From Paramoeba atlantica (Eukaryota; Protista; Discosea): DNA of 64,000 bases. Of this stretch, positions 1,200 to 38,125 are shown one piece after another (the stretch's first letter is position 1; each line of letters starts with the position of its first letter). The position numbers and the translations under genes are program-made. The stretch lies in contig CDRNVI010000022.1 of the NCBI GenBank assembly GCA_977017575.1, positions 92,424-156,423 on the forward strand, given 5' to 3'. Under the pieces are notes generated by a model that was not told the DNA's origin, did not search any database, and saw nothing but the letters and a program-made list of their open reading frames with translations.

Positions 1200-4100
1200 A
1201 AAGACACAACCGTTGCAACGCTTAACGTTACGACGTTAAAACTCGAGGGGGAAGATGAATTCTCTCTTCGAAGATGCACCCGTTTGAACGAGGTGCTTGC
1301 TTTCATGCAGGTAAGGGGGGTTGGTGTCATGTGCCTTCAGGAGACGAGATACAATTTCTCGAAGGAAGGACATGAGGATGGAATCCTCTACAGGCAGGTT
1401 GAAAACCTAGGGGAGAGGTTTCACCTGTATTTGCAGTCGGCCGCCGCACGCGATTCATATAATGGCATGGCCATAGTGAGCCGGCATGCGTTTCGGAAGG
1501 TTTGGATGGTGAGCAACAGGGTGATGGGAGCTGAGTATCCAAATAAAAAAAAATCATCATCCAAATCATTCCGGATTGCTCCGGATGGTCACTGGCAAGC
1601 CAGACCCTTCACAGACAGATTTGGAAGTTCCGAGGCCGACGTCCTCTACCAGTTTCCGCTTGTCCAAGGCGGCACCAACGTGCTGTTGCCAACACGCTGC
1701 GTCGACGAACTGTACGTCAACACGGCTTACCCAAGAGGTGTAAGCCGGGTAAGGGAGCTGGTTCCCTGAGGAAAGGGAGCTGGTTCCCTGAGGGAGCTGA
1801 GTATCCCCTGGAGGAGGGGACCGGCACTTTATTCAATGTCTATGCCCCAATACGGGACTCCTCAGAAGCCGTTCATGCGGCATTTCTGGGTGACTTGGAC
1901 AAGGCGTGTCGTGAGGTCAAGGCTGAACGGAAACGAAGACCTTTATTGGTCATGGGGGATTTCAATGCACCGATAACGCTCGTGACAAATCCGAGCATGG
2001 ATCCCCCAGCGGTCTCTCAGCTGAAAGGCCTCTTGTGCTCCATTGGCTGTAAGTCAGCACACACCCTCTGCCCGAGCAAGAGGAAATGGACATGCGAGTT
2101 GCCGGGCAGGAGGGCGGAGACAAAGGACCGTCGCAACGTAGGAGCAGAGAAGGTGGGGCAGAAGGGGGAAGAAGGAAAGGTGGAAATGGGAAGGAAAGGA
2201 TCAGAGCCAGAGGGGACGGATAACAACGGTATGGTGAAGAGGGGAAGGGAAGGAGAGGAAAATGGGGACAAGGCCTGCGAGTGCATGCACGTAAAAGGGG
2301 AGGTCGGCAACAAGGGAGGTAGCAAAAGGCGTGGGGACAACAAGGTGCGGAGACAGCTTGACCACATCATGGTCAGTGAGCGCTTTGCCTCCAGCATTAG
2401 GAGGCACAAAGTACTCAAGGCGCCAGTGCCTACAGTACACTGCGTCGTTATGGCGGATGTGAAAATCAAGTGGCGTTCTAAAGGTACAGGGGGGCAAAGC
2501 AAGGTACCCTGGCCAAGACTTGGAGATGAAGAGAAGAAGGCATCCTTCCAGCAAGCAGTGTGGGAAATGGCGAAGAAAGAGGAAGAGATCACATGGGAAC
2601 ACTTATCGGAAAATATGGTACATACAGCGAAAAGACTCTCAAAAAAGGACCGAACCCCAAAAACGACCAACGCGCCTACAGGGACAGAAAACACACCACC
2701 GGGTACAGAAACACCGCGCATCTCAGGGTTTCGCGACTTATTTCTTCAGAGTCGAAAACCGGACCACTTCAAGGAAGTGCTAAAAGAGCACGGAGAAGAA
2801 ATTGAGGCGCAGATTGGGCAGGAATGCGCCGAAATTGAAGCAGGTCTGCGGCGAAACCGTTCTAATCCGTGGCGTACTCTACGTAGAATTTGCGGTTTGT
2901 ACAGGGAGACTCTTTGCATCGAGACCTCGTCGACAAGGGAAACTCTTAACATTGTTAAAGATTTCTTTGCTCGTATGGGGTCCGATGATCGCGGAGATAA
3001 AGATATAAAATTTGACAAAGTAGTCAGCCCGAAAGTACCAATCAACGATGAAAGTTTCACTGCAGAAGAGCTCGAGGACGGCATCAGTAGACTAGCGCGC
3101 AACAAGGCACCTGGAATAGACCAAATTCCGGCGGAGGCACTCAGAATGATCACAGAGCATGCTGAACTGAGAAAATCCTTATTACATATTATAAACGAGG
3201 TTCATCGAACAGGGGTTTCGCCTGCGTCCTGGAAAATTGTCCTTCAGGTGCCTATTCCAAAAAAAGGCGACCTGACACAAATAGCGAATTGGCGGCCAAT
3301 CTGTCTCGTGAACAGTGCGGTTAAATTGATGAATGCAATGATCCTGAAAAGAATCAGACCATCCATCGAGCCGCTCCTTCGCGACAGTCAATTTGGTTTT
3401 CGGCCAGAAAGGTCCACGGCAGGGGCGCAAATCATTTTGAATGATGCAAGAGTTCGTGCGACCAGGGGCAAGAAAGGCATTGCAGTGGCATTCATGGACT
3501 TCGCAAAAGCATTTCCCTCGGTATCGTTTCATGCTATCCGTGCTGCATTGAATGCCTTTCATGTCGGACCCGCGCTTACTAGGATGGTAATGTCCTTGTA
3601 CTCGAATTTAAAAGGAATAGTCCGCACACCATACGGAAATACGGATTCTTTTCCCATTGAAACAGGAATTCTTCAAGGGGACGTGCTTGCTCCTTATCTC
3701 TTTGTGCTTGTAATCGATAGGATTCTCAACAAAGCACTCGATAACAAGCCGCTCGGGATTCTTCTAAGGAGCAGCGGGACGAAAAGCAGGGGAATTCAAG
3801 AATTTAGACTAAAGGACATCGACTACGCAGACGACATAGCACTTTTAGCTTCCACGAAACATGAAATATCGCAAATGATCGAAGCTACGGCAAATGAGGC
3901 AAAACCAGCTAATCTGAGGATTGCCGTGGGGAAAACCAAGACTGCGTGGATGGCCTTTGGGAAAGTTCCGGGGGGGACGCGAGAACTTCGAGCAGGATCG
4001 CTTGGCAAGATTCCTCTTGTGGATTCCTACCGGCATCTTGGTCATCTTCAAGATGCTACAGCATCATCCCCCATCAAGGACAGGCTAAGGCTCACATGGG

Positions 4101-5530
4101 CAGCATTTCGTAAACTCAGTGGAATTTGGGCTTCTCCTCTGAGTGCTGCCACGAAAATACGCCTGTTTGACTGCTTGGTCTACCCTATTTTAACGTTTGG
4201 TGCAGCCTCTCTTTCTCTTTCTAACAAAATGCTTCGAAAAACGGAGGTTGAGGTAAATATGATGAGGAGATTCGCTTGTAACTCAGCAAAGCTTGACGAT
4301 TTCGGACATTGCTACCCATTAGAGTCCTTGTATTGTGGTACGCCTCGATTTTCGACCGTGCATCGTGTTGCCCGTGCGAAAATCGTTGGCCACATGCTCA
4401 GGCACTCCTCTACGTTTCGCGAGCTCGTTCAATGGAATAGCACGGAAAAAACAAGAAATATTTCTCCTAGCGAAGCAAGTTTTAATGATCTAGGGGTCAC
4501 TCTGGAGCAGGCGCTTGTTTACTCGCAGGATCGGCTACACTGGCAAAAGCTATGCGATGAGCTCAGGCAGAAACTTGAACCACTTCCGATGTATGAGGTA
4601 TTAAGGTCTCCAAGGTGGAAAACTAAACACACTCAAGCGGTCAAAAGCAAAAGCTCTTATGAGCTACAATTTGTGGAGGAAGGCTCGGATCCGTTCCCCA
4701 TGAGTGAGGGTGAGGTTCATATGTATATTGATGGCTCTGTTCGGCAGTTGCGGGGGTCCAAGGAACAAAGATCCGGTGCGGGAATAGTTCTGAGAATGAG
4801 TGGAACAGAAGACAAATACTATTCCATAGCATTGGATGCTGGCTCAGCTGAGAGAGCTGAGGTTGAATCGCTGAGGGAAGCGCTGGAAAGGATACCTAAT
4901 GAGGCTCAAACAGTTGTCATACACACCGATTCGTTCTATGTATGGAATTTCTTCCATCATACTCGTCTGCGACGGCGAATCATTGGGTATAACAATCTAC
5001 CGAATGGGGGTATCCTTGAGAAATTGGATCGGGAAATTCGAACGCTCCAATCGATGGATAAAAGGTGTTACGTGTGCAAAGTGAAATCCCACAACGGGAA
5101 CATTTACAATGAGAAGGCAGACACCTTGGCGCTTGCAGGGTCGAGAAAAATAGTCCCAGACTCAGAAATAAAGAGGAGAAAGACTGCGACAAGTGCCTCA
5201 GAAGCTCAAAGGGTTAGCTCAGAAACCGTCCAAACCATGAATCGTCCTCGGAAACACTGTGGCCAAATACCTAAGCCATTAGGGAAAAGACGGGATTACT
5301 TCAAGATTGCAGAAGGTGATCCTCTCTCCAAAAAGGGTACCTCGCCACCTGTAGAGACTGGAGTGGATTCTCCTGAAAAGAAAGAGTGTTTGCCTGAGGA
5401 ATGTGATGCCAAAAATACAAAGTTGCATGAAAGACGTACCACGCCCGGTTCAGCGGACAAGGAGCATGAAAGGGCGAATTCACCTGAGAGAAAGACGTCG
5501 AAGCGACGACAAAAACGGATGTGTTCTTAA
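1200..5530 (+). CDS. LINE polyprotein (APE endonuclease, RT, RNase H), disrupted by a 251 bp insertion at 1541-1791
   Basis: APE: TLNV, LQET, NVYAP, MGDFNA, QLDHIMV. RT: KAPGID, DFAKAF, GILQGDVLAPYLF, YADD. RNase H: YIDGS, AERAE, HTDS, VKSH, NEKAD. Removing the insert and one TSD copy restores the frame (GAEYP|LEEGTGTLFNVYAP). The start codon was not identified. Confidence 0.88.
1541..1791 (-). mobile_element. SINE-like non-autonomous retroposon, 5'-truncated copy
   Basis: 15 bp TSD GGGAGCTGAGTATCC at 1526-1540 and 1792-1806. About 210 bp match 20801-21010. The orientation is inferred from the fixed tail end. Confidence 0.85.
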
Positions 5531-5582
5531 CCGATGCAAATCGGTCTTATAGGATAGGATAGGATAGGATAGGGCAACGAAT

Positions 5583-5850
5583 GAGCACCGCGACAGTTCA
5601 GGAGATGGATCTCCATATTCGAGACGTCCTAGGCGACGGATATGGCACGCACTCAATCAAGAGAGGAGCCATCACCTTTCTATTTCAGGAAATAGTAGAA
5701 GGCCACCTCAACTTATCGGAAGTAATGAATCTCTCAAAGCACTTGAACGTAGAAAGTCTACTGCGGTACAACGCCAACCAAATAACTACGGCAAGAGCGT
5801 TAGGGACTCAGAAGGTGTCAGTACTTCTCCCCGGTGCATCGATAATGTGA
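5583..5850 (+). CDS. Tyrosine recombinase, C-terminal catalytic part
   Basis: GYGTHSIKRG, SKH and LLRYN supply the H-x-x-(K)R, H and Y catalytic residues. Confidence 0.87.
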
Positions 5851-7439
5851 TGGTTCAGGAGTTTTACGAACAGGTTCCTTTCCTTAAATCGTATTCAATT
5901 TTATGTCCAAGGCGCAGTTCCAAATTAGCTAAAACCGACGACTACCATATCCCCTTGCATGCAAAGGATAATATTCCGACGTTGAATGTTCAAAAATTAC
6001 GGAAGTGGCTAACGGAACAACAGAATGATAGGCTAACGTACGTTCTTGATGAACTCACCAAGTTGCCCGAGAAAGCTGAGTCCGCTCCTTGCATTAAACC
6101 GGCATTGGCTCCAGGAGACATTCCAGCATTGATTCGGTCTAAAGTCATATCGAAGGTATCTACCGAAGAAGCCAAACGACGCCCGACCATGCAATATATG
6201 GTTCCGTTCACTGTCCTTGAAAAAGACGACGCGGGCAAAGACAGAAGACGTTTTATTTCATGGACACGATCAGACAATTTACGCCTAAAGGACTACGAAC
6301 CAGCTGTTCCTCTCCTACACCCTTCTCGTTATTTATACGCAGTAAATGCTGAGGTGGGGGTAAAACGTGATCTAATGTGTGGTTTTTACCAGGTTGGCTT
6401 ACCCTTACGATCCCGAGCAAAGTTTCGGTTTCGTGCAGAAGATGGGCAATTATACGAAATGAATGTTTTACCCATGGGCCACAGATGTGCGCCTGAAATT
6501 ATGCATTGCATGACAGCAGCGTTGGCAGGAAATAAAGATTATTGCTCAAAATCCCACTCGTATCAACACGGTTCTACTGATATCTATATAGATGGAGTTC
6601 GTTTTTCCGGATCTAGAAAACATGCAGACGAGTATGTTTATTTTATTGACTCGCGTGCGCGAGTGGCAGGAGCTCGATTTAAAGATCAGGACGTTCCTCC
6701 GACGAAACAATACGTGTTCAACGGAGTGAAATTTGATCACGCATCAAGCCGGGTCTGCTTGGGACCGAAGGTTGTGAGCAAATTGAAACGGGATACTTTT
6801 TCGAGACTCACTTTCTTAGAGCTGGAGGCGGCGGTGGGGCGTCTACTGTACTGCTCTTCGATACTTGGTGTGGTAATCCCGCAATATCACTTTGCGATAA
6901 AAATAGTACAACGACGTATTAATTACTTGAACCGACATCCTTTTGCAAAGGACAAAATCGTGGATCTTCCCATGAAAACTCGTGTGATCTTAGCTCAATG
7001 GCGTGACGACTTGATTAAAAACGTGCCGATAAGAGCACCCCCTCACCCCGCCACTGCACCTCCGCGTCATAAACTCTTTACAGACGCCTCCTCAAAAGGA
7101 TGGGGAGCAATTCTGTACATGGATAGCGGAGAGGTTAAGATTTTGGGCGCACCTTGGCCAGCAGAATGGACCTACGAAGTTAACAAATCAGAAGCGGCGG
7201 CGGTGCGATTCGCCCTCGAAGAATTCCAAAAATATTTCGAGCAAGGGACTTGCGTTCAGCTTTGGATTGATAATACGTCTTGTCGAGCAGCGTTGAATCG
7301 GAAAATATGCAAGTCTGATGGCATAGCGAAAGAATTGAAAAGCATTTTACAGAGTTTAAAGAATAAAGGAATATGTATTCAAGCTCATTATATTTCTACG
7401 AAACTAAATCCAGCGGACCCAATAAGCAGAATTTTTTAG
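5847..7439 (+). CDS. Reverse transcriptase + RNase H (DIRS/VIPER type)
   Basis: RT motifs KRDLMCGFYQV, LPMGHRCAP and YIDG; RNase H motifs LFTDAS, NKSEA, WIDN and NPADPISR. The same frame is also open across the whole YR gene (see findings). Confidence 0.9.
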   Translation: MMVQEFYEQVPFLKSYSILCPRRSSKLAKTDDYHIPLHAKDNIPTLNVQKLRKWLTEQQNDRLTYVLDELTKLPEKAESAPCIKPALAPGDIPALIRSKVISKVSTEEAKRRPTMQYMVPFTVLEKDDAGKDRRRFISWTRSDNLRLKDYEPAVPLLHPSRYLYAVNAEVGVKRDLMCGFYQVGLPLRSRAKFRFRAEDGQLYEMNVLPMGHRCAPEIMHCMTAALAGNKDYCSKSHSYQHGSTDIYIDGVRFSGSRKHADEYVYFIDSRARVAGARFKDQDVPPTKQYVFNGVKFDHASSRVCLGPKVVSKLKRDTFSRLTFLELEAAVGRLLYCSSILGVVIPQYHFAIKIVQRRINYLNRHPFAKDKIVDLPMKTRVILAQWRDDLIKNVPIRAPPHPATAPPRHKLFTDASSKGWGAILYMDSGEVKILGAPWPAEWTYEVNKSEAAAVRFALEEFQKYFEQGTCVQLWIDNTSCRAALNRKICKSDGIAKELKSILQSLKNKGICIQAHYISTKLNPADPISRIF

Positions 7440-7638: not shown

Positions 7639-7759
7639 GTGGCTGCGTGCCAGGGGGCAAAGCCCCTTCACTACGTATTATATTTTTATATTATGCTTTT
7701 GAAATAGTTTGCGCGCTATATACATCCGGATAGTTGCATCAATAATACGAATATTCTTT
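7639..7759. repeat. 121 bp direct repeat, second copy at 8110-8230
   Basis: Both copies run from GTGGCTGCGTGCCAGGGGGCAAAGCCCC to AATATTCTTT. Confidence 0.88.
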
Positions 7760-7882
7760 AGCTAGTAAATATAGGCAGTGGATGAGATTCAGGATATCAG
7801 CGATATATTTCTTTAGCTCTTACAACAATGTTTTCTTACAAGTTGTTTTTAATGTATGTGGAAGACTCTCGTCGTTGATTTC
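7750..7882. repeat. 133 bp dispersed repeat, second copy at 12265-12397
   Basis: Both copies run from AATATTCTTTAGCTAG to CGTTGATTTC. Confidence 0.88.
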
Positions 7883-8070
7883 TGATAGTTTACGAGAGGA
7901 AATTTAGACGAGAACAAATACGAATTTGAAAAGACTCCTTTTTCTCGAATGGCCCTACGAGGCACATAATCTCTGATTATGAATTCTATTATATCTTTTA
8001 ATATGATTTAAATTATAACTTTATGTAGATTGTGTATAGTTTTATAGCTTACATTCTCTTACAAGTTATT
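7883..8070 (+). mobile_element. Partial, inverted copy of the AT-rich TSD-less insertion family
   Basis: Begins TGATAGTTTACG (compare TTATAGTTTACG, the reverse complement of the full copies' end) exactly where the 133 bp repeat stops. Carries TGGCCCTACGAGGCACAT at 7950-7967. Confidence 0.6.
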
Positions 8071-8660
8071 TTTATTAGTGTGCGATGCCCTCCCACCAGC
8101 CCCCAACCAGTGGCTGCGTGCCAGGGGGCAAAGCCCCTTCACTACGTATTATATTTTTATATTATGCTTTTGAAATAGTTTGCGCGCTATATACATCCGG
8201 ATAGTTGCATCAATAATACGAATATTCTTTTTTTTTGAACAGCACTGCCTCAGGTATATCAATTCTCCTAGGCTGATGTTGCCATTTGTTCAACCGAATT
8301 TCTTGTATCTCTACACGGTTTACTTACTAATGCTTTCTTGAAATACAATCACAAGTGTCTCTTTCGAAGATTGAAGATGGGGTATTCCAATACAAAAAGT
8401 GGTCTTAATTTCCACCAACTCCTCAATAATCTAACGCAAATTGAAGGTATTTTTTTTTTTTATTCTATTAGAATTTCCCTGAGTTGGTGATCTCAGGCTA
8501 CTATTGAAAAGGGAATGTTATGGTCTTTCGGTTTTATATAACAATATCTTCATATAGTCGAACGTGTACGAGCTGCCGTCATATGTTAAGAATTTGGGTT
8601 TTCTCAAATACCCGTAAATTTAGATTACAAATTTTACTTTAAAGAGACTTTAAATATATC

Positions 8661-12760: not shown

Positions 12761-13911
12761 TTTTCTGTGGTAGAGCGGCGAGTTTCAGGGCGTTTGCGTC
12801 TGCTCCACTCCACTTTTCTAGAACTTTGTTTACTTGGTTCTCGAAGGATTGTGCTAGTTGGAAAGTAGCGCCTGGCCGATGTACTCGTAGAGTGGAACTT
12901 TTTTTTTTTATTTACGTTTAATAACCTGGCCCTTCGGGGCACATAAATATATGAACTTATGATATGGCCCTTCGGGGCACATGTATTATTCAAGAATGCG
13001 AAACACCGCCACCATGCGATCGGAACGGACACCACCACGAACACTCCACAGGTACGGGTGCTAATATTATGAAAGTATCGCACATATGTCCCGTATCCCA
13101 AAATATCACGAATGTTCACGTATCGCATAAACTTCCCGTATCCCAAAAAACACTTACCATACGCCGTATCATACACCCTAAATCTCGCAGGCATTCTAAA
13201 CACGGATAATCGTTGTGAATAATAATAAGAACTTTTAAGAGCTTTTCTAATGTGCGAACTTGTTGGTCGACTCACTGACGCAGTCCACCAATCCAATGTG
13301 CTTCTGGAATATACTCGCGGAGCTGCGATACAATAGTATACGCTGCTAGCTTTTCTATCTCGAGTTGGAAGGCCTCACGTACGTCTTCGTACTTTTGTTT
13401 GGCTCGTTGGGATAATGCCTTGAGGAGGGTTTTGGTGTCGTTGTGCAGAAGACCGCAGTCAGAGGCGGCCAGGCAACGAAAAGAGTCGCTTTCTACGCCT
13501 TTCTCCGTAACGTACTTCTTGAATTTCTTGTCGAGCACGTGCTGCATCAGCGCTGTACTTGTTTGTTTGGCATAGCTGCTGCAACAGGTGTGAACAACGG
13601 TAAAATCATACAGGACCTCCCCCATGTGGGGCCACATAATAGCAAGATCAGGACCGGATCGGATTCTGCGGGCTTTGCAAGGATGATGTTCAGCTACTTC
13701 CGCTGAGATGGAACACTTGCACTTAGTACAGAAAAACGAAGAATGGATGCGCGGTTCGATAATACAAGGGAGACCAGCTTTGGAGCACAAATCTGCGAGG
13801 TACCTCACTATGTGTGAGTGCTTTCTGGTGCAATTCATGCCCGAGCACCGGGAGCATCCTGCGACGTGTGGTATAATGCTGGTAGGAGATTCATGGCCAC
13901 AGCATCCAGGG
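12761..13911 (-). mobile_element. Family C copy C2, 5'-truncated (REL fragment ORF 13272-13838)
   Basis: 6 bp TSD CCGTAA at 12755-12760 and 13912-13917. The protein is a close homolog of the C1 C-terminus (GPDLAIMWPHMGEVLYDF). Confidence 0.88.
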
Positions 13912-24859: not shown

Positions 24860-26029
24860 AGGGTGATGCATTCTTTTTTTTTTCTTTTTCTTTTCTTTGG
24901 TTTGGTTTCGTCAAATAGAGTGATTTGTTGTAGATTGATTTATAGAGATAAATTTGAATAATAAAAAAAAAAAAATACTGATACCGTACATTCATAGAAA
25001 GTTAGAACTCATACTCAAAAAAAAAAAAAAAAAAAAAAAAAGAATTGTGGACTCAGTCCACAATGCTAGCTGGGTGACCCCGGGGTCTTTTGCCGAGCAC
25101 TTCGCGGAGACCAAGGCGCGACAGCGACAAGAAGCAGAAAAAGCAGGACACCTCTTCACAGCGATGGTGGTGGAATCCTTTGGTTCCTGGAGCGAGAGTG
25201 CGCTAGCGTTACTCCGGGACATCGGAACCCAACGGGCGAACGCATCCAAAGGGCTCCTTTCACGAGACCAAGCGCGAAACGATCTCCTAACAGATCTGAA
25301 CGTGACGCTAATGCGTTCTCAAGCCAGGATGATGGTTTCGCGCATCCGCGTAGAGGACCCAGCGGATCCTTTGGTAGAGGCTTAAGCCTCTACTGACAGT
25401 CCTATTTCAGCACGAAGACGCCATGGTATCCAGGACGGGTGCTGGTCGGGTCGACAGAGTCTATGCTCACGCCTAGCCCGCGAGGGCTAGGTACCCCAAG
25501 TGAGGTAGTACACGGGCAGTGAATCTCCTCCCCGTCGGCCAGCATCCTGTTTCGCGACCGTGTCGCTGTCGACACAGGCCCGCGCCTGCGCCCTCCCGTA
25601 TAGCAAGGGACGGGTTCACAAGTCAGGCCGTGGAGTGGTCGAAAGACCCGGTCCGGAACGCGCGAATGGATTGGGCCTGGATTGCTTGTTTTTATTTTTA
25701 CTGTGTCTTGTTTGTCGTATATACTTAGGGGAGATTGAATTGCTAGTTTTGGGCTAAGAAAAAAGAAAAAGAAAATATACTTCTGTGGAAATAAAAAGAT
25801 TTGCTAATTTGATTGCTTGTTTTAAATTCATATACCCCCCCCAATGGACCTACTATGTACTTGGTTCGTCTACTGGGTCAACATATAGAGGCAATGCCGC
25901 GATTCATACTTCTCCCCCCTTATTAACTGCAAAAAAAAAGACCTCCTTTAACGATAAAGATACAGTTTCTGTACCTTGTTGAATTATTTTCCTTATTCCA
26001 TCTTTTTCCAGGTACGCGGTTCCTTCTAT

Positions 26030-29000
26030 ATGACCGTCGAAGAGGAGTCGACTCATAAAAAAGGATCCTGGGATCAATTTGAAGGTAATGCGCACCTGAT
26101 TAACCAGCCGAGTACCTACAACGAACTTCTATACACCACTCCCATTCCTACAAATATCCCTGAAGACTGGTGCAAAAAAGCTGATTCGATTTCACACGGA
26201 AAATCGACACCCGACACAGGACGCGAAGATGGAAGCGACGAAGAAATGAATCACTCTCGGGTGCTCATCGGCCCAGATCACGAGGTTAAAGCACCACAGT
26301 CTGACAAAGATTCTGTTGCAAAGAAGTTCGTACGGCGTAAAGCATCCACCTCATCTCCTTGTACTAAAGGGCACATTCGAGGCATCATAAAAACTCCCAA
26401 GACGCGAGACAAAACCACTTTCAGAAAAACGGAAGAGGCGGACCATAGGGTACACGACAATGAGTTACGCGATAGGGAAGATTTGCTTGCAATGGAGCTT
26501 GATCCATGTTCGACGCAACTAACGACAACCCAAATACAGACTGCGTCCGCTGGATCCACGATTCACGACCAAGCTGCCCCCTATCCCCCACCATCGCAAC
26601 AAAGAGGAATGCCCCCAGCAACCAATTCTGCAGAGAACGCTGTCTCAGCAGAATTGAGTCAAGGACAACGGGAAGATGGGTACTCCGGCTCACAAGGCGC
26701 ATCTTTTCCCCTCAACGGAGACGATTCTCGACAGTGCCCGGGTCAGGGATGTTCATGGCGGAGCTTGCCACACGGCGGGTCGTGGCAAGCTTTTTACAAC
26801 CACGTCGCTTGCCGGCACGGAAGCAGCATTCCCGAAGAGTGGTGGGATGGAGAAGGTCGCTTCCTTTGTTCTTCTTGCGGGCGAAACTACGACAAAAACA
26901 AACGTTCATATCACCCCCATAGCTGCAAAGCAACAAAGGCCTCTCCGCCATCCGAGCTTCATGCGCAAACCCTTCCTGACGCGGAGATCCCAGGACGGAG
27001 AGCCGGAATCACTCAGTTTGAGCTTCCATCTTTATCAACTATCTGCTCGCTACCGCTTAGTACATGCAAGGACGTACCACATCGATGCCGCCAGCTGTGG
27101 GGTGAAATTCTTACGGAGACCATGGATAACGCCGTCAAAGACAATTCACTGCAGTCGTGGACCTTGCTGGCCATGCTACCCAAATGTGTCCTCCCCGCCC
27201 CACGCCGTGGAGGTCGCAAAGGCCACATGGCATATGCTTCCCACGCCTACAGTTGCATGCAGCGTTGGCTTGCGTTGGATTATTCCCTCCTCTGGAAAGA
27301 GGCCTTGACGACCTACCGCAAAAAGGAAGCAACACCTACCGAGGTTAGTGATGAAGAAGAGAAAGCCACACTAAGGGCAGAACTCCTCGTTCGGCAGGGG
27401 GAATATTCCAGAGGCTTGGCTGCTCTAACGTCGGATCCCATGGCTCCGGACGATGATGACACGTTCTCTAAGCTACAAGAAAAACACCCCTGCCGTCTGC
27501 TCATCCCTGGGAGCGTCAACCACTTCCCCGCTGCAGCACCCCTGGAGTTGGATGAATCCGAAATTGAGAAGGCGGTAAAGAGTTTTCACCGAGGCTCCTC
27601 CGCGGGCACAATGGGACTGCGCCCCGAGCACTTACAAGCGGCGATACTTACCCACGGAGGCAAGAACGTTAATTCACTCCAGTCTCTAACGAAGCTGGCG
27701 AATCACCTCCTAGCGGGAAAAGCACCAGTGGAAGTACAGAGCCACTTTGCTGGAGCCCGGCTGTGCGCTTTAGAGAAAGGCGAAAACGACGTCCGCCCAA
27801 TTGCCGCAGGAGAAACTGTGAGACGGTTGGTGAGCAAGGCTGCGTGCAACGCGGTTCGGTCCAAAGCTAGTACTCTTTTCGCTGGTCGGCAATATGGTGT
27901 AGCTACACCAGCAGGGGCTGAGCGCATAATCCACATGTGCCGCTTGGCTATTTCATCGAACATGGATTGCCCCAATTTTGTACTATGCAAAGTTGACCTC
28001 CGAAACGCGTTCAACAACGTGAGCAGAGCTTGCTTTCTACCTCTAGTCCAGGAACATTTCCCTGAGCTATTCCCATGGATAAACTGGTGCTACGCAAATC
28101 CCAACTCCCTTACCTACGGACTCCGATCACTTTCTTCCGAAGAAGGAGTGCAGCAGGGCGACCCTTTAGGACCACTACTCTTCTCATTAGTGTCCTTAGC
28201 GCTCTCAGAAGCAATCGATCTTCAGGCGGACCTCTTCGCCCAGCTATGGTACCTCGACGACGGTGTCCTCATTGGCCAGGCGCAAGACGTCAGGAACGCC
28301 CTCGACACGATTGCCAGAGTAGGTCCGCAATGGGGCTTATTCCTTAACATGTCTAAATGTGAGATCATTACACCCCCCACCTCGGCACACCACGCCTCTG
28401 AATTTCCAGACATACCCGTCAATAAGATCAACGTCCATGGCAATTTCGACATCCTTGGAAGCCCGGTGGGATCGCCCGAACATTGCTCAGAGTATCTCGC
28501 GATCCACGCCATAGGCCCCGCTGAGGATACGCTCGACGCGATCGCCACCATTCGGGACCCACAGGTCGCACTTGCTCTTATCAGGCAGTGTGCCGGTTTC
28601 TGCCAGATGGTCTACGCCCTGAGAAGCACACCACCCCAAACCATAGCCCATCTCTGCGCCCGACTCGACGATTTTCTTATGACCGCCACCGAAGCTATAA
28701 TTTGCCCCCTGGACCCCTACGCCCGATCTCAGGCACAACGTTTGAAGCGGCATGGCGGTTTTGGGTTAAGATCCGCAGCGTTACACGCCACTGCCGCATA
28801 CGTATCTTCCGTCGCCTTCTCTGCGGATAAAGATTCATGGAACCCCTCTGATGCGGATGGGTTTGTGGAAGCTGTCAGGGACATCAATCAGAAAGCTGGA
28901 ACATCTTTACTTGATCCCCGAGGTCGGATCCTTACAACGCCGAACGCCCCTTGCGAAAAAGCAGTGAGTAGTCCCTTCTTTTACCGAAAAAGGAAACGTA

Positions 29001-30466
29001 CGCTAAGTATCAACGATAACCCTCCCTCAGAGAACTCCCTACCACCCGCGCTCCGTACAACTTCCCGCACCATGCACATCCCTGAAGATATCCACTTATC
29101 TACACCATTGTATGCCTCGGAGGATTGTACTGATACAGATCCCCCACAATGGAGGAAAGGGAAGATTCCACGCCAACGAGACATCAGCTACGCGATCGCG
29201 GCCTATGATTTCTCTCATTCGTACGAGATGTCAGATGTGCGAACACGAACAAGATGGATATCCCAATGCGGGAAAGGGGCAAGCAGCTGGGCTTTTGTAA
29301 CCCCGTCTAAGGACGAATTGTTCATCATCGTATTTGTAATAAATAGAAAGATACTGCACAATAACATATTCGTTTCACCAGCGCATATTTCCTTCTGCAC
29401 ATATTACTAATAACACTTTGAACTCGTGTAATCCAATCCAAAGATAAAATAGTTTTTTCACTGGGACGTCCCTTCATATAAATCATAACTTCCAACCAAT
29501 CACTGTCCTATACCTTGCGATCGGGTAGTACCACGCGGGGACCACCCACTCGCCAGTTCCTATATACCCAACTTTCCTTACGCGAATAGGGAGTGAAAAA
29601 CAAACTACAAGGTGACAATTGTAATTTTTCTATACACATATTTATCACATATTAATAGATCATAATAAAATATTATTATGTGCCCCGTAGGGCCACACAT
29701 ACCCTCTATAATATAGAAAACCTGCAAATCCTCTTCAAACAATTCTTTTCGTAAACTATAAATGGGGTATTCCTTTACTCCTACAGAATTTCGAACCTTG
29801 GCCCGCTGGTGGTTAGGGGTCGACGTCTACCCTGAAGAAGGGAAATGCCCTATGCCGAAATGTTCTCTCCCACTGGACACCAAAGGGGACCACGCATTGT
29901 CCTGCAAACACGGCAATGGAATTATCACGAGGCATAATGCCGTGGCAGATCAGTTCGCCGACCTTTGCAGCAGAGCCAAACTGGCCCCACAACGAGAAAA
30001 AAGTCTTGGCAACAGAGGCCCAGGGGGCGCCCTCACCAGACCCGGCGATGTCTATTTGCCCGGTCTCCAGTTGGGGAATCCGATTGTACTTGACTTCGCG
30101 GTCACCCATGCTCAGCAACTAAAATATACGGACAAAGTCCGGAATGCTAGCTGGGTAACCGCGGGGTCATTTGCTGAACAATATTCATCAACGCAAAAGG
30201 GCCAGCAGAGACACGAATCTGAAGAAGCCGGCTGTGCATTCACCGCCATGGTGGTGGAGAGCTACGGTGCGTGGAGCAGCAGTGCATCCGCAGTACTCCG
30301 TAAAGTTGGAGAACGGCTTTCGCACGCCTCGTGCGGGTTATTGACAGAAGGGGGGGCGACGAGCAGAATCTTCACGGAGTTAAACGTGACCCTCATGCGC
30401 CTTCAGGCCCGCATGATGGTTAATCGCCTTCTCCCTGATGACCCGTTTTCTTGCTTGGGGGAGTAA
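26030..30466 (+). CDS. Family A polyprotein (LsmAD-like N-terminus, Zn finger, RT, CCHC, REL); 1329 aa after removing the 447 bp insertion at 29315-29761
   Basis: GVQQGDPLGPLLF, WYLDDG, CPMPKC...HALSC, RPGDV...LDFAVTH. The rejoined WAFVTPSKD|MGYSFTPTEF matches D (WAFVIPSKERGYSYTPTEF). Confidence 0.88.
29315..29761. mobile_element. AT-rich TSD-less insertion, copy 1 (447 bp), class unknown
   Basis: Runs GAATTGTTCATCA to CGTAAACTATAA; interrupts the A ORF; shares termini and internal blocks with 37349-37786. Confidence 0.8.
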
Positions 30467-36670: not shown

Positions 36671-38125
36671 TTGGGTAAAGCTTCACTCGTTTTCGCAATT
36701 ATGACACATCAAGTTTTCGGCACCCCTGGTGCGCCGGAGCGTGGTGCTCCCGAAACTCAGACTGAACAAGTTCTCAACCTTGACCAAGTTGAGAGTTTGT
36801 TGCGCAACGGAAACGGGAGCGTTCGGATGTCTGCGACAGACAAGGAAGAGTTTGGCAAGAAGATTTTGACACTGCTCGAACGAGGTTTTAAGGTGCGGGT
36901 AGAAGCACGGTGGGCGGAGCAGCAGGATGACACGATTCAAACTGTGGTAGGAGACGTGTACCGTAGACGTGCTAGAGGCAGTAATTCCTTTGAGTTGTGG
37001 GCCTCTTGGGATGACGAGCCCGACAATGAATATGAGTTTCCTCACCCCTTGATTGATTATTTCTCACTATCGATAGTCAAGGTGTACAAAGCGATGCCTG
37101 GGGGGAAGCCACGTGATGATCAGTTGACGGCGATGCAAGAATTGCAGATTGCTGACCCGGCGAAGTTTTCCGCATTTGTTCCTCTTACTTGGGCAGCTTG
37201 GATTGAATCTCTCGACGAATTCAAAGCTCGCGAGTTGATTCGGGAACTTCGTGAGTCTCCTCAGTTGGGTGTTCGTTTTAACCCCCCTGCACATCGCGAA
37301 CGTTTGTTCGCAATTCTTGTGAAATGGATTTATGCAGCACGAGTTATGGAATTGCTCATCAGAATATAATTTTAATAAACAAATAATTAATTTGTAATCA
37401 CTAAATATAATTTATCAAATACGAGGCACCCAAATACCTGTGTTTTGAACGTTACTATAAATAAAATTATTTGATGAATATAGTACTAAAGGACGTCCTT
37501 ATCAAAACAATCTTCACCTCTCTCTCTCTTGCGAATGGGTAGTTCCCCGGCGGGGACCTAACGCAACTTTCCTTTTGCGAAAATAGAGAAAAGCTACTAG
37601 TGTAATAATAAAGTATAGTACTGTATAATTGATAATCTACAAATATACATGGTTCCCCCCAGAGGGGGCAATGTCACACTGAAATCAGATCATAATATTA
37701 AATATCATGTGCCCCGTAGGGCCACGGTCAGATCTCATACAGAATCAAAAGTATCTTCTTTGATCAATTCTTTCCGTAAACTATAAGAAGGATGGAAGGA
37801 TGAACAATTCCTGTGCATTGCGGAGATGCTGGTAGAAGAACTCAGAAACCATTACTGGGCCTCGACGGGGGCTCCTGTTGAACGTGTGCAACAGCGACTT
37901 CATAAAGACGACGATCCCAACGATCGCTACGGCCAGATTATGACTGAAGAACAACTGCGTAGTAATCGTCCTCGGGCTTCGAAAGGAAGTCGCGTGTGTT
38001 TTAATTGCCGACAGCCAGGGCACTACCGAAATCAGTGTCCGCGTCTGCATAGCGCAGGTACGAAGACGGTTTTTCGCCCGGGGGTGGCGAGCAGCGCCCA
38101 GGCAGGCGTAAGACGCACGGAATAG
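36671..38125 (+). CDS. Gag-like protein with CCHC knuckle, interrupted by the 438 bp insertion at 37349-37786
   Basis: Removing the insert rejoins YAARVM|EGWKDEQF...MLVEELRN in frame; CFNCRQPGHYRNQC knuckle. Confidence 0.83.
37349..37786. mobile_element. AT-rich TSD-less insertion, copy 2 (438 bp), class unknown
   Basis: Runs GAATTGCTCATCA to CGTAAACTATAA; shares GGACGTCC, CTTGCGA..GGGTAGT, CAACTTTCCTT and ATGTGCCCCGTAGGGCCAC with copy 1. Confidence 0.8.

What the first reader, a model, noticed from the sequence alone, without database searches (positions are those of the whole stretch)
29315..29761. TSD-less ~440 bp AT-rich insertion family with conserved ends and GC-rich islands
Seen: two diverged full copies (29315-29761, 447 bp; 37349-37786, 438 bp), both in the sense orientation of their host ORF, in unrelated retroelements. 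Exact removal restores each ORF. There is no poly(A), no TSD and no shared flank. Conserved blocks: GAATTGYTCATCA, GGACGTCC, CTTGCGA..GGGTAGT.CC.CG.CGGGGACC, CAACTTTCCTT, AGATCATAATA, ATGTGCCCCGTAGGGCCAC and CAATTCTTTYCGTAAACTATAA. The 5' GAATTG is complementary to a CAATTC 16 nt from the 3' end. The hairpin reads as a cUNCGg tetraloop on the opposite strand. A partial inverted copy starts at 7883, and the hairpin recurs at 12927 and 12965. Inference: a non-autonomous YR- or HUH-mobilised element (compare SIRE, the short partner of VIPER), or a non-canonical intron. It does not fit GT-AG, group I or group II boundaries.
Basis: partly seen in the sequence, partly recalled or inferred. Interest (0 to 1): 0.75.

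Follow-up and report, generated by a model that had tools for sequence, protein, structure and literature searches.

The report
Mini copies of a recombinase retrotransposon
The two ~440-letter insertions are stripped-down copies, ends only, of a 5-kb jumping gene that integrates with a tyrosine recombinase; they are this protist's counterpart of the known SIRE/VIPER pair of Trypanosoma cruzi, so real but not a new kind of element.

Summary
Both units (29315-29761 and 37349-37786) are real insertions. Near-identical uninterrupted copies of each host element elsewhere in the genome show the empty site. Copy A has no target-site duplication; copy B has only a 3-nt GAA ambiguity.

I found the autonomous partners. 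They are 5.0-kb elements laid out, on the unit's + strand, as [full unit][5' half][4.1 kb][3' half]. The genes lie on the opposite strand: a gag-like ORF, a tyrosine recombinase (Cre-like predicted fold, catalytic motifs present) and an RT/RNase H ORF. Read in gene sense this is A1-genes-B1-A2-B2, the split-direct-repeat layout published for VIPER, whose short partner SIRE equals A2+B2.

The window's two units are A joined directly to B with the genes deleted. Every solo copy I examined has its own deletion junction, so they look like one-off by-products or remnants, not an amplified SINE-like family.

No ribozyme, intron boundaries, terminal inverted repeats or HUH gene were found.

The scan had already noted split-direct-repeat recombinase elements on other DNA of this genome. 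Verdict: a new member of a known kind, of modest interest.

The parts
29315..29541 (-). Family A solo unit: B repeat, the 3'-terminal split repeat in gene sense; gene sense is the window's minus strand
   Evidence: 100% identical to the gene-flanking 5' halves at C30, C16 and C47. Shared with the attached full unit E' up to ...CGCGGGGA.
29542..29568 (-). 27-nt remnant of the partner's 3' UTR, kept at the deletion junction; CAA at 29569-29571 is a 3-nt microhomology
   Evidence: Alignment of solo, E' and gene-flanking halves. This junction is unique in the genome.
29569..29761 (-). Family A solo unit: A repeat (5'-terminal split repeat in gene sense), with a UACG-loop hairpin at 29678-29697
   Evidence: 100% identical to the gene-flanking 3' halves at C75, C47 and C43.
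37349..37556 (-). Family B solo unit: B repeat
   Evidence: 100% identical to the gene-flanking 5' half of the 5010-bp elements at C46, C4 and C21.
37557..37562 (-). Deletion junction: 2 nt of partner sequence (CC) plus a TAAC filler
   Evidence: This junction is unique in the genome.
37563..37786 (-). Family B solo unit: A repeat, with hairpin at 37707-37725
   Evidence: 100% identical to the gene-flanking 3' half of the full-length elements.
25976..29314 (+). Host of copy A, upstream part: ORF of another retroelement (RVT_1)
29762..30466 (+). Host of copy A, downstream part, same phase
36671..37348 (+). Host of copy B, upstream part: gag-like ORF of another retroelement
37787..38122 (+). Host of copy B, downstream part, with a CCHC zinc knuckle
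5847..7439 (+). RT/RNase H ORF of a third, related recombinase-retroelement family
   Evidence: RT_RNaseH E 6e-7.
7639..7882 (+). Third family: B1 repeat. The first 121 nt recur 100% identical at 8110-8230.
7883..8087 (+).
   Evidence: nhmmer E 8e-6 against the unit profile.
8088..8109 (+). Third family: C-rich centre between A2 and B2 (complement of the G-rich centre motif)
8110..8230 (+). Third family: B2 repeat (partial)
12925..12985 (+). Two copies of the GCCC-UUCG-GGGC hairpin in another element

Best explanation
Each ~440-bp unit is a miniature, gene-less copy of a VIPER-like tyrosine-recombinase (YR) retrotransposon with split direct repeats.

The window's units are A joined directly to B, with the 4.1-kb coding core deleted at or within ~27 nt of the repeat boundaries.

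They carry both element termini, so they carry the two halves of the B|A junction site (CAATTC, 16 nt, GAATTG) that forms when the ends are joined in a circle or a tandem. I infer that a circular or end-joined DNA form of the mini unit was inserted by the partner's recombinase. Conservative strand exchange would explain the exact boundaries and the lack of a target-site duplication.

Shown here: the insertion, its exact boundaries, the partner's structure and genes, and the differing junction in each solo copy. Inferred: that integration went through a circle and the YR, and that the deletion arose before integration (by template switching in reverse transcription or by deletion in a one-unit circle) and not after it.
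For: Partner elements exist. Family B is [E' 456][5' half 210][core 4119][3' half 225] = 5010 bp, with the same layout at C46, C4 (twice), C21 and C18. Family A is 257 + 4068 + 193 with an attached E' at C43, C30 and C16, and forms a head-to-tail array at C92.

The genes lie on the opposite strand: gag-like 404 aa, YR 349 aa, RT/RH 940 aa. YR evidence: Pfam Phage_integrase E 3.4e-4 over 19-167/172 of the profile; conserved R, K, HxxKR, H and LRY motifs; AlphaFold2 model pLDDT 74.5 with Cre recombinase as top Foldseek hit, E 4e-6, probability 1.00. The RT/RH ORF has relatives in Trypanosoma theileri and Diplonema papillatum.

A1=A2 and B1=B2 are identical in the C46 copy outside the centre. Empty sites show exact, TSD-less insertion; 13 further insertion sites also lack TSDs.

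The published model matches. VIPER has A1...B1-A2-B2, and SIRE = A2+B2 with a ~30-bp exclusive centre. Sizes are alike: T. cruzi A 173, B 219, gag 492, YR 338, RT/RH 948 aa (PMC6681497).
Against: The YR Pfam hit is below the gathering score, and a profile search of PDB sequences found nothing; the assignment rests on motifs plus the predicted fold. No phylogeny with reference VIPER, TATE, DIRS, Ngaro or PAT sequences could be made.

Every solo junction is different and occurs once. So there is no direct proof that a mini unit ever moved as such. Post-insertion decay of a full-length copy is not excluded. Unlike SIRE, the window's units lack the conserved centre, and solos are few.
Confidence: 0.85

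Rival explanations
1. Post-insertion remnant. A full-length 5-kb element was inserted at each site. It later lost its attached unit by homologous recombination between the split repeats, and lost its coding core by a microhomology-mediated deletion. The ~440-bp unit was never mobile by itself.
For: Each solo junction is unique. A 3-nt microhomology (CAA) marks copy A's junction and a 4-nt filler marks copy B's. Copies lacking the attached unit exist at C47 and C54. Core-deleted variants also occupy the attached position, at C30, C6 and C92.
Against: It needs two separate events at each of at least four sites, with each deletion ending within 0-27 nt of the repeat boundaries. The units are 100% identical to the halves of current full-length copies, which leaves little time for two events.
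Confidence: 0.3
2. A non-canonical or self-splicing intron, or an introner-like element removed from host transcripts.
For: Same strand as the host ORF, and removal restores the frame. Both lengths are multiples of 3. A conserved hairpin is present.
Against: No GT-AG or group I/II boundaries, and no Rfam family on either strand at E up to 5. The hosts are dead-end transposon copies with 98-99% identical uninterrupted paralogues. The unit's ends are the ends of a 5-kb YR retroelement.
Confidence: 0.02
3. The short unit is an independent landing pad, and the 4.1-kb coding core is a separate site-specific element that inserts into the unit's centre.
For: The core always sits at the same place in the unit. 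A 3-nt CAA is shared at both core boundaries in family A.
Against: The attached unit carries a conserved 24-nt centre that is absent from the 'filled' unit: 81 genome matches against 0 for the control. Solo junctions retain 2-27 nt of core sequence, which fits deletion and not an empty site. The whole 5010-bp block recurs as one unit at unrelated sites.
Confidence: 0.03
4. A DNA transposon derivative (MITE), a Helitron/HUH element or a solo LTR.
For: Short, AT-rich, with conserved ends.
Against: No terminal inverted repeats, no TSD and no TG...CA ends. The partner encodes YR and RT/RH, not a transposase or Rep-helicase.
Confidence: 0.02

Closest known systems
SIRE, the short partner of VIPER in Trypanosoma cruzi (Vazquez et al. 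2000; Ribeiro et al. 2019, PMC6681497)
   Same: A ~430-bp unit made of the partner's two end repeats. The partner is ~4.5-5 kb with gag-like, YR and RT/RH genes in that order. The repeats are laid out A1...B1-A2-B2, and the attached A2-B2 unit has a short exclusive centre. Whether the short unit is a remnant or is mobilised in trans is an open question in the literature too.
   Different: SIRE equals A2+centre+B2. The window's two units lack the centre and instead keep 2-27 nt of the coding core's edge. Solos here are few and each has its own junction, so this is not a large amplified family. There is no detectable nucleotide similarity claim to SIRE, which I could not test. The host is a different spliced-leader protist.
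Ngaro-like and PAT-like YR retrotransposons (Goodwin and Poulter 2004; Poulter and Goodwin 2005, as cited in PMC6681497)
   Same: Split direct repeats A1-genes-B1-A2-B2, YR-mediated integration, no TSD.
   Different: Gene order here is gag-YR-RT/RH, with the YR ORF overlapping the RT frame as in VIPER. No methyltransferase domain was seen.
Solo LTRs of LTR retrotransposons
   Same: A repeat-only remnant left at an insertion site. Some solos in this genome, which carry the centre (for example C29:766871-767331), could arise by recombination between the element's direct repeats.
   Different: No TSD, no TG...CA ends, no integrase. The window's units are not the product of simple repeat-repeat recombination.

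Membership tests
VIPER-like / split-direct-repeat YR retrotransposons (order DIRS) | Encodes a tyrosine recombinase | tested here: met
   The partner's 349-aa ORF hits Pfam Phage_integrase at E 3.4e-4, below the gathering score. R, K, HxxKR, H and LRY motifs are conserved in 8 sequences. The AF2 model's top Foldseek hits are Cre, Tn1549 Int and XerA, probability 1.00.
VIPER-like / split-direct-repeat YR retrotransposons (order DIRS) | Encodes RT and RNase H | tested here: met
   Weak RVT_1 and RT_RNaseH hits in the 940-aa ORF. 54 relatives were found, several with RVT_1 or RT_RNaseH Pfam marks, including T. theileri and Diplonema proteins.
VIPER-like / split-direct-repeat YR retrotransposons (order DIRS) | Split direct repeats A1...B1-A2-B2 | tested here: met
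   also in the window at 7639-8230.
VIPER-like / split-direct-repeat YR retrotransposons (order DIRS) | Integration without target-site duplication | tested here: met
   Empty sites and the flanks of 13 insertions. One site has a 3-nt ambiguity.
VIPER-like / split-direct-repeat YR retrotransposons (order DIRS) | Gene order gag-like, YR, RT/RH (as in VIPER) | tested here: met
   L035 minus strand: 5445-6659, 4347-5396, 2725-5547.
VIPER-like / split-direct-repeat YR retrotransposons (order DIRS) | RT and YR group with VIPER/TATE in a phylogeny | tested here: inconclusive
   Only a pairwise link was obtained: T. theileri protein, 30% identity, E 2e-58. No reference set was available for a tree.
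SIRE-type short partner | Consists of A2 + exclusive centre + B2 | tested here: not met
   The window's units lack the 24-nt centre and carry core remnants or filler instead. Other solos in the genome, such as C29:766871-767331, do carry it.
SIRE-type short partner | Dispersed, amplified copies of one short master | tested here: not met
   Both junctions are unique in the genome. All five solos aligned differ at the centre.
Spliceosomal, group I or group II intron | Canonical boundaries or catalytic RNA structure | tested here: not met
   The ends are GAATTG...CTATAA. No Rfam match on either strand.
Twister-headed YR retroelements noted earlier in this genome | Twister ribozyme at the element's 5' end | tested here: not met
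   No twister or other ribozyme hit in full-length family A or B, or in the units.

The most novel reading that the evidence does not exclude
The mini units are made afresh each time by the element's own machinery. One route is the recombinase resolving the two B|A junction sites of the replicative circle into a gene circle and a mini-circle. Another is reverse transcriptase jumping between the two repeat boundaries. The resulting circles then integrate with a short GAA/NAA homology preference. On this reading the conserved 24-nt G-rich centre and the CAATTC-16-GAATTG dyad are the working signals of this replication cycle. That would give a tractable view of how split-direct-repeat elements replicate and integrate, which is still only modelled.
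Probability: 0.25. Interest if true: 0.5.

Novelty: new member of a known kind. Interest (0 to 1): 0.3.

Why it matters
It settles what a puzzling TSD-less insertion is. It also adds a well-preserved VIPER/SIRE-like system, in a spliced-leader protist outside the well-studied trypanosomes, with identical split repeats, open gag-like, recombinase and RT/RNase H reading frames, tandem arrays and several kinds of derivative.

The set of derivatives is natural material for testing the replication and integration model of split-direct-repeat retrotransposons. That set is: the full element, elements without the attached unit, attached units with deleted centres, solos with the centre, and solos with core remnants. 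It also bears on the open question, raised for SIRE, of whether the short units are mobile or remnants. It does not reveal a new class of element.

Tried and rejected
- **Rfam scans.** Scans of the units, their surroundings and both full-length families, on both strands with permissive thresholds, found no ribozyme or known RNA.
- **GT-AG reading.** Reading the deleted core as a GT-AG intron on the gene-sense strand does not reproduce the junctions, by inspection.
- **YR against PDB sequences.** The profile search found nothing; the predicted fold was needed.
- **Spliced-leader fossil.** I asked whether the A/core boundary (a pyrimidine tract followed by AAGGAAAG) is a spliced-leader acceptor. 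A search for a spliced-leader fossil fused to the family B core start gave 0 matches, so the idea stays untested.
- **Consensus RNA folding.** Folding the A and B repeats of three families gave only the already conserved hairpin and no convincing covariation.

Full report
**The observation**

The two units lie at 29315-29761 (447 bp, here family A) and 37349-37786 (438 bp, family B). They are not chance matches. Searches of the window's own 45.7-Mb assembly return many copies at E down to 1e-233. The 22-nt 3' end motif occurs 186 times against 0 for its reversed control.

Uninterrupted paralogues of each host element give the empty sites.
- For A, the 500 bp on each side abut exactly at C63:487285/487284, C60, C27, C6 and C22:91333/91334, at 98-100% identity.
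- For B, they abut with a 3-nt overlap (GAA) at C1:109589-109591, C59, C26 and C18.

So the insertions are exact. There is no poly(A), and no target-site duplication in A. In B there is at most a 3-nt microhomology. The host frames are open in the same phase on both sides.

**The partners**

The genome hits fall into a pattern: a full unit, immediately followed by a 5' half, and a 3' half about 4.1 kb further on.
- Family B is [456-bp unit E'][1-210][4119 bp][214-438] = 5010 bp, at C46, C4 (twice), C21 and C18.
- Family A is [E'][1-257][4068 bp][255-447] at C43, C30 and C16. At C92 it forms a head-to-tail array. Longer copies (C43, C47, C54) hold nested insertions of other elements.

There are three:
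- a 404-aa gag-like ORF with no Pfam match;
- a 349-aa ORF in a second frame;
- a 940-aa ORF with weak RVT_1 and RT_RNaseH matches.

The 349-aa protein is a tyrosine recombinase on four lines of evidence:
- It matches Phage_integrase over nearly the whole catalytic domain, at E 3.4e-4, below Pfam's cut-off.
- It is 73% identical to its family A counterpart.
- It conserves the ASRWTE arginine, the TKTSR lysine, HSAKRG, KHQ and LLRY.
- Its AlphaFold2 model (pLDDT 74.5) has Cre recombinase, Tn1549 integrase and XerA as best structural matches, at probability 1.00.

The RT/RNase H part has relatives in Trypanosoma theileri and Diplonema papillatum at about 30% identity.

**The architecture**

Read in gene sense, the element is A1 - gag-like/YR/RT-RH - B1 - A2 - centre - B2.
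- A is the reverse complement of the unit's 3' half: 193 nt in family A, 224 nt in family B.
- B is the reverse complement of the unit's 5' part: 227 nt and 208 nt.

In the C46 copy, A1=A2 and B1=B2 are identical outside the centre. This is the split-direct-repeat layout.

Ribeiro et al. 2019 (PMC6681497) describe exactly this for VIPER of T. cruzi and Crithidia. Their figures are A 173 bp, B 219 bp, gag-like 492 aa, YR 338 aa and RT/RH 948 aa. They show that SIRE is the A2-B2 region with a ~30-bp exclusive centre. They leave open whether SIRE is mobile or a remnant.

The window holds a third family's B1-A2-centre-B2 at 7639-8230, behind an RT/RNase H ORF at 5847-7439.

**What the window's units are**

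Alignments of solos, attached units and core-flanking halves show that the attached unit E' has a conserved G-rich centre, GTGGTTYGGGGGATGGYGGGYGGG. This motif has 81 genome matches against 0 for the control.

The window's units lack that centre.
- **Copy A** is B (29315-29541), plus 27 nt of the core's edge, plus a CAA microhomology, plus A (29569-29761).
- **Copy B** is B (37349-37556), plus CC, plus a TAAC filler, plus A (37563-37786).

Both are 100% identical to the halves that flank the core in current full-length copies. Both junctions occur once in the genome.

Other solos differ again at the centre.
- C40:67679-68121 has a junction 4 nt shorter.
- C29:169981-170427 breaks 4 nt into A.
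- C29:766871-767331 carries the centre and so is SIRE-like.

By coordinates, 17 of 24 exact-centre units are followed by the junction with a 5' half. At least three more centre units have a 3' end not followed by that junction and appear to be solos: near C3:717975, C18:104151 and C27:85591. I could not read these.

**How it most likely works**

*Shown.* The units carry the same termini as the 5-kb elements and were inserted exactly, without duplication. The partner encodes a YR.

*Also shown.* When ends are joined, as at B1|A2 and in arrays, the sequence reads CAATTC, 16 nt, GAATTG, with the element boundary directly before GAATTG. There are 34 such junctions in at least four subfamilies. A first-stage note on other DNA of this genome (s1-396292) pointed to the same dyad.

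*Inferred.* The YR acts on this junction in a circular or end-joined DNA and exchanges strands with the target, which leaves no duplication.

*Inferred for the solos.* A one-unit molecule lacking the core was integrated. It could have been made by a template jump during reverse transcription or by deletion in a circle. Against this stands the remnant model: a full insertion, followed by repeat recombination and then a deletion. The data do not exclude it. Copies without the attached unit (C47, C54) and attached units with deleted centres (C30, C6, C92) show that such rearrangements are frequent. I put about 55:45 on integration as a mini unit.

**Rejected readings**

- **Intron.** The boundaries are GAATTG...CTATAA. 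Rfam finds nothing. The hosts are transposon copies with intact paralogues.
- **HUH, MITE or solo LTR.** There is no Rep gene, no inverted termini, no TSD and no TG...CA ends.
- **Landing pad.** The solos keep bits of the core, and the attached unit has its own centre.
- **Twister-headed elements.** Earlier agents described these in this genome. They are a different architecture: families A and B have split repeats and no ribozyme.

**Limits**

Its spliced leader...ACGATAAAGATACAGTTTCTGTACCTTGTTG, is of kinetoplastid type.
- No reference set was available for a phylogeny.

**Verdict**

The feature is real and is explained as mini derivatives of a VIPER-like split-direct-repeat recombinase retrotransposon. 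It is a new member of a known kind, and I score interest at 0.3.

Noticed in passing
L035:2077-2100 (C46:161577-161600); window 8088-8109 (complement); 81 sites genome-wide: The 24-nt G-rich centre between B2 and A2 (C-rich in gene sense), GTGGTTYGGGGGATGGYGGGYGGG, is the best-conserved piece across several YR families: 81 matches against 0 for the control. Its role is unknown. Possibilities are a pyrimidine tract for RNA processing, a primer or strand-transfer signal, or a G-quadruplex on the cDNA strand.
   Followed up: partly
window 29315/29761, 37349/37786; L046, L047, L031, L036, L043, L045: All four solos whose host frame could be read, plus the C92 array, lie with the unit's + strand in the host ORF's sense. 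The three full-length copies inside ORFs (C4, C54, C43) lie the other way. The sample is small and the cause unknown.
   Followed up: partly
flanks listed: The flank next to the GAATTG end starts with GAA in 3 of 13 independent insertions and with NAA in 5 of 13, more than base composition predicts. This may be a short homology used in strand exchange.
   Followed up: partly
L035:1840-1869 and 6880-6909 (C46); L044 flanks (C47): A family B element and a family A element are each inserted, seamlessly, into arrays of the same 18-bp satellite AAGGTCTTACAATAAGGA, at different positions of the repeat.
   Followed up: no
L031:3512-9103 (C92:39511-45102): A head-to-tail array of family A units sits inside an RT ORF. 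The first unit is an 815-bp core-deleted derivative with a 15-nt duplicated filler, followed by at least two 4520-bp units.
   Followed up: partly
L043, L044, L045 (C43, C47, C54): Family A cores carry nested 4.2-4.6-kb insertions of other elements at three different positions. In C47 the aligned segments on either side of the insertion share an 18-nt overlap, which may be a duplication at the insertion site.
   Followed up: no
L039:6660-7420 (C18:154159-154919): Directly downstream of a family B element lies a related repeat of 555-bp period. Its A-type end (…CGTAAACTATGA) is followed by GACTTCC instead of GAATTG. This is a further family without the dyad at the junction.
   Followed up: no
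window 25930-25994 and 14 other window sites: Many retroelement copies begin with the spliced-leader exon (...ACGATAAAGATACAGTTTCTGTACCTTGTTG), including the host of copy A. Earlier notes of the scan cover this.
   Followed up: no
L035:4347-5547 minus strand: The whole recombinase ORF overlaps the N-terminal extension of the RT/RNase H frame, so the stretch is dual-coding. First-stage notes on this window record the same.
   Followed up: no
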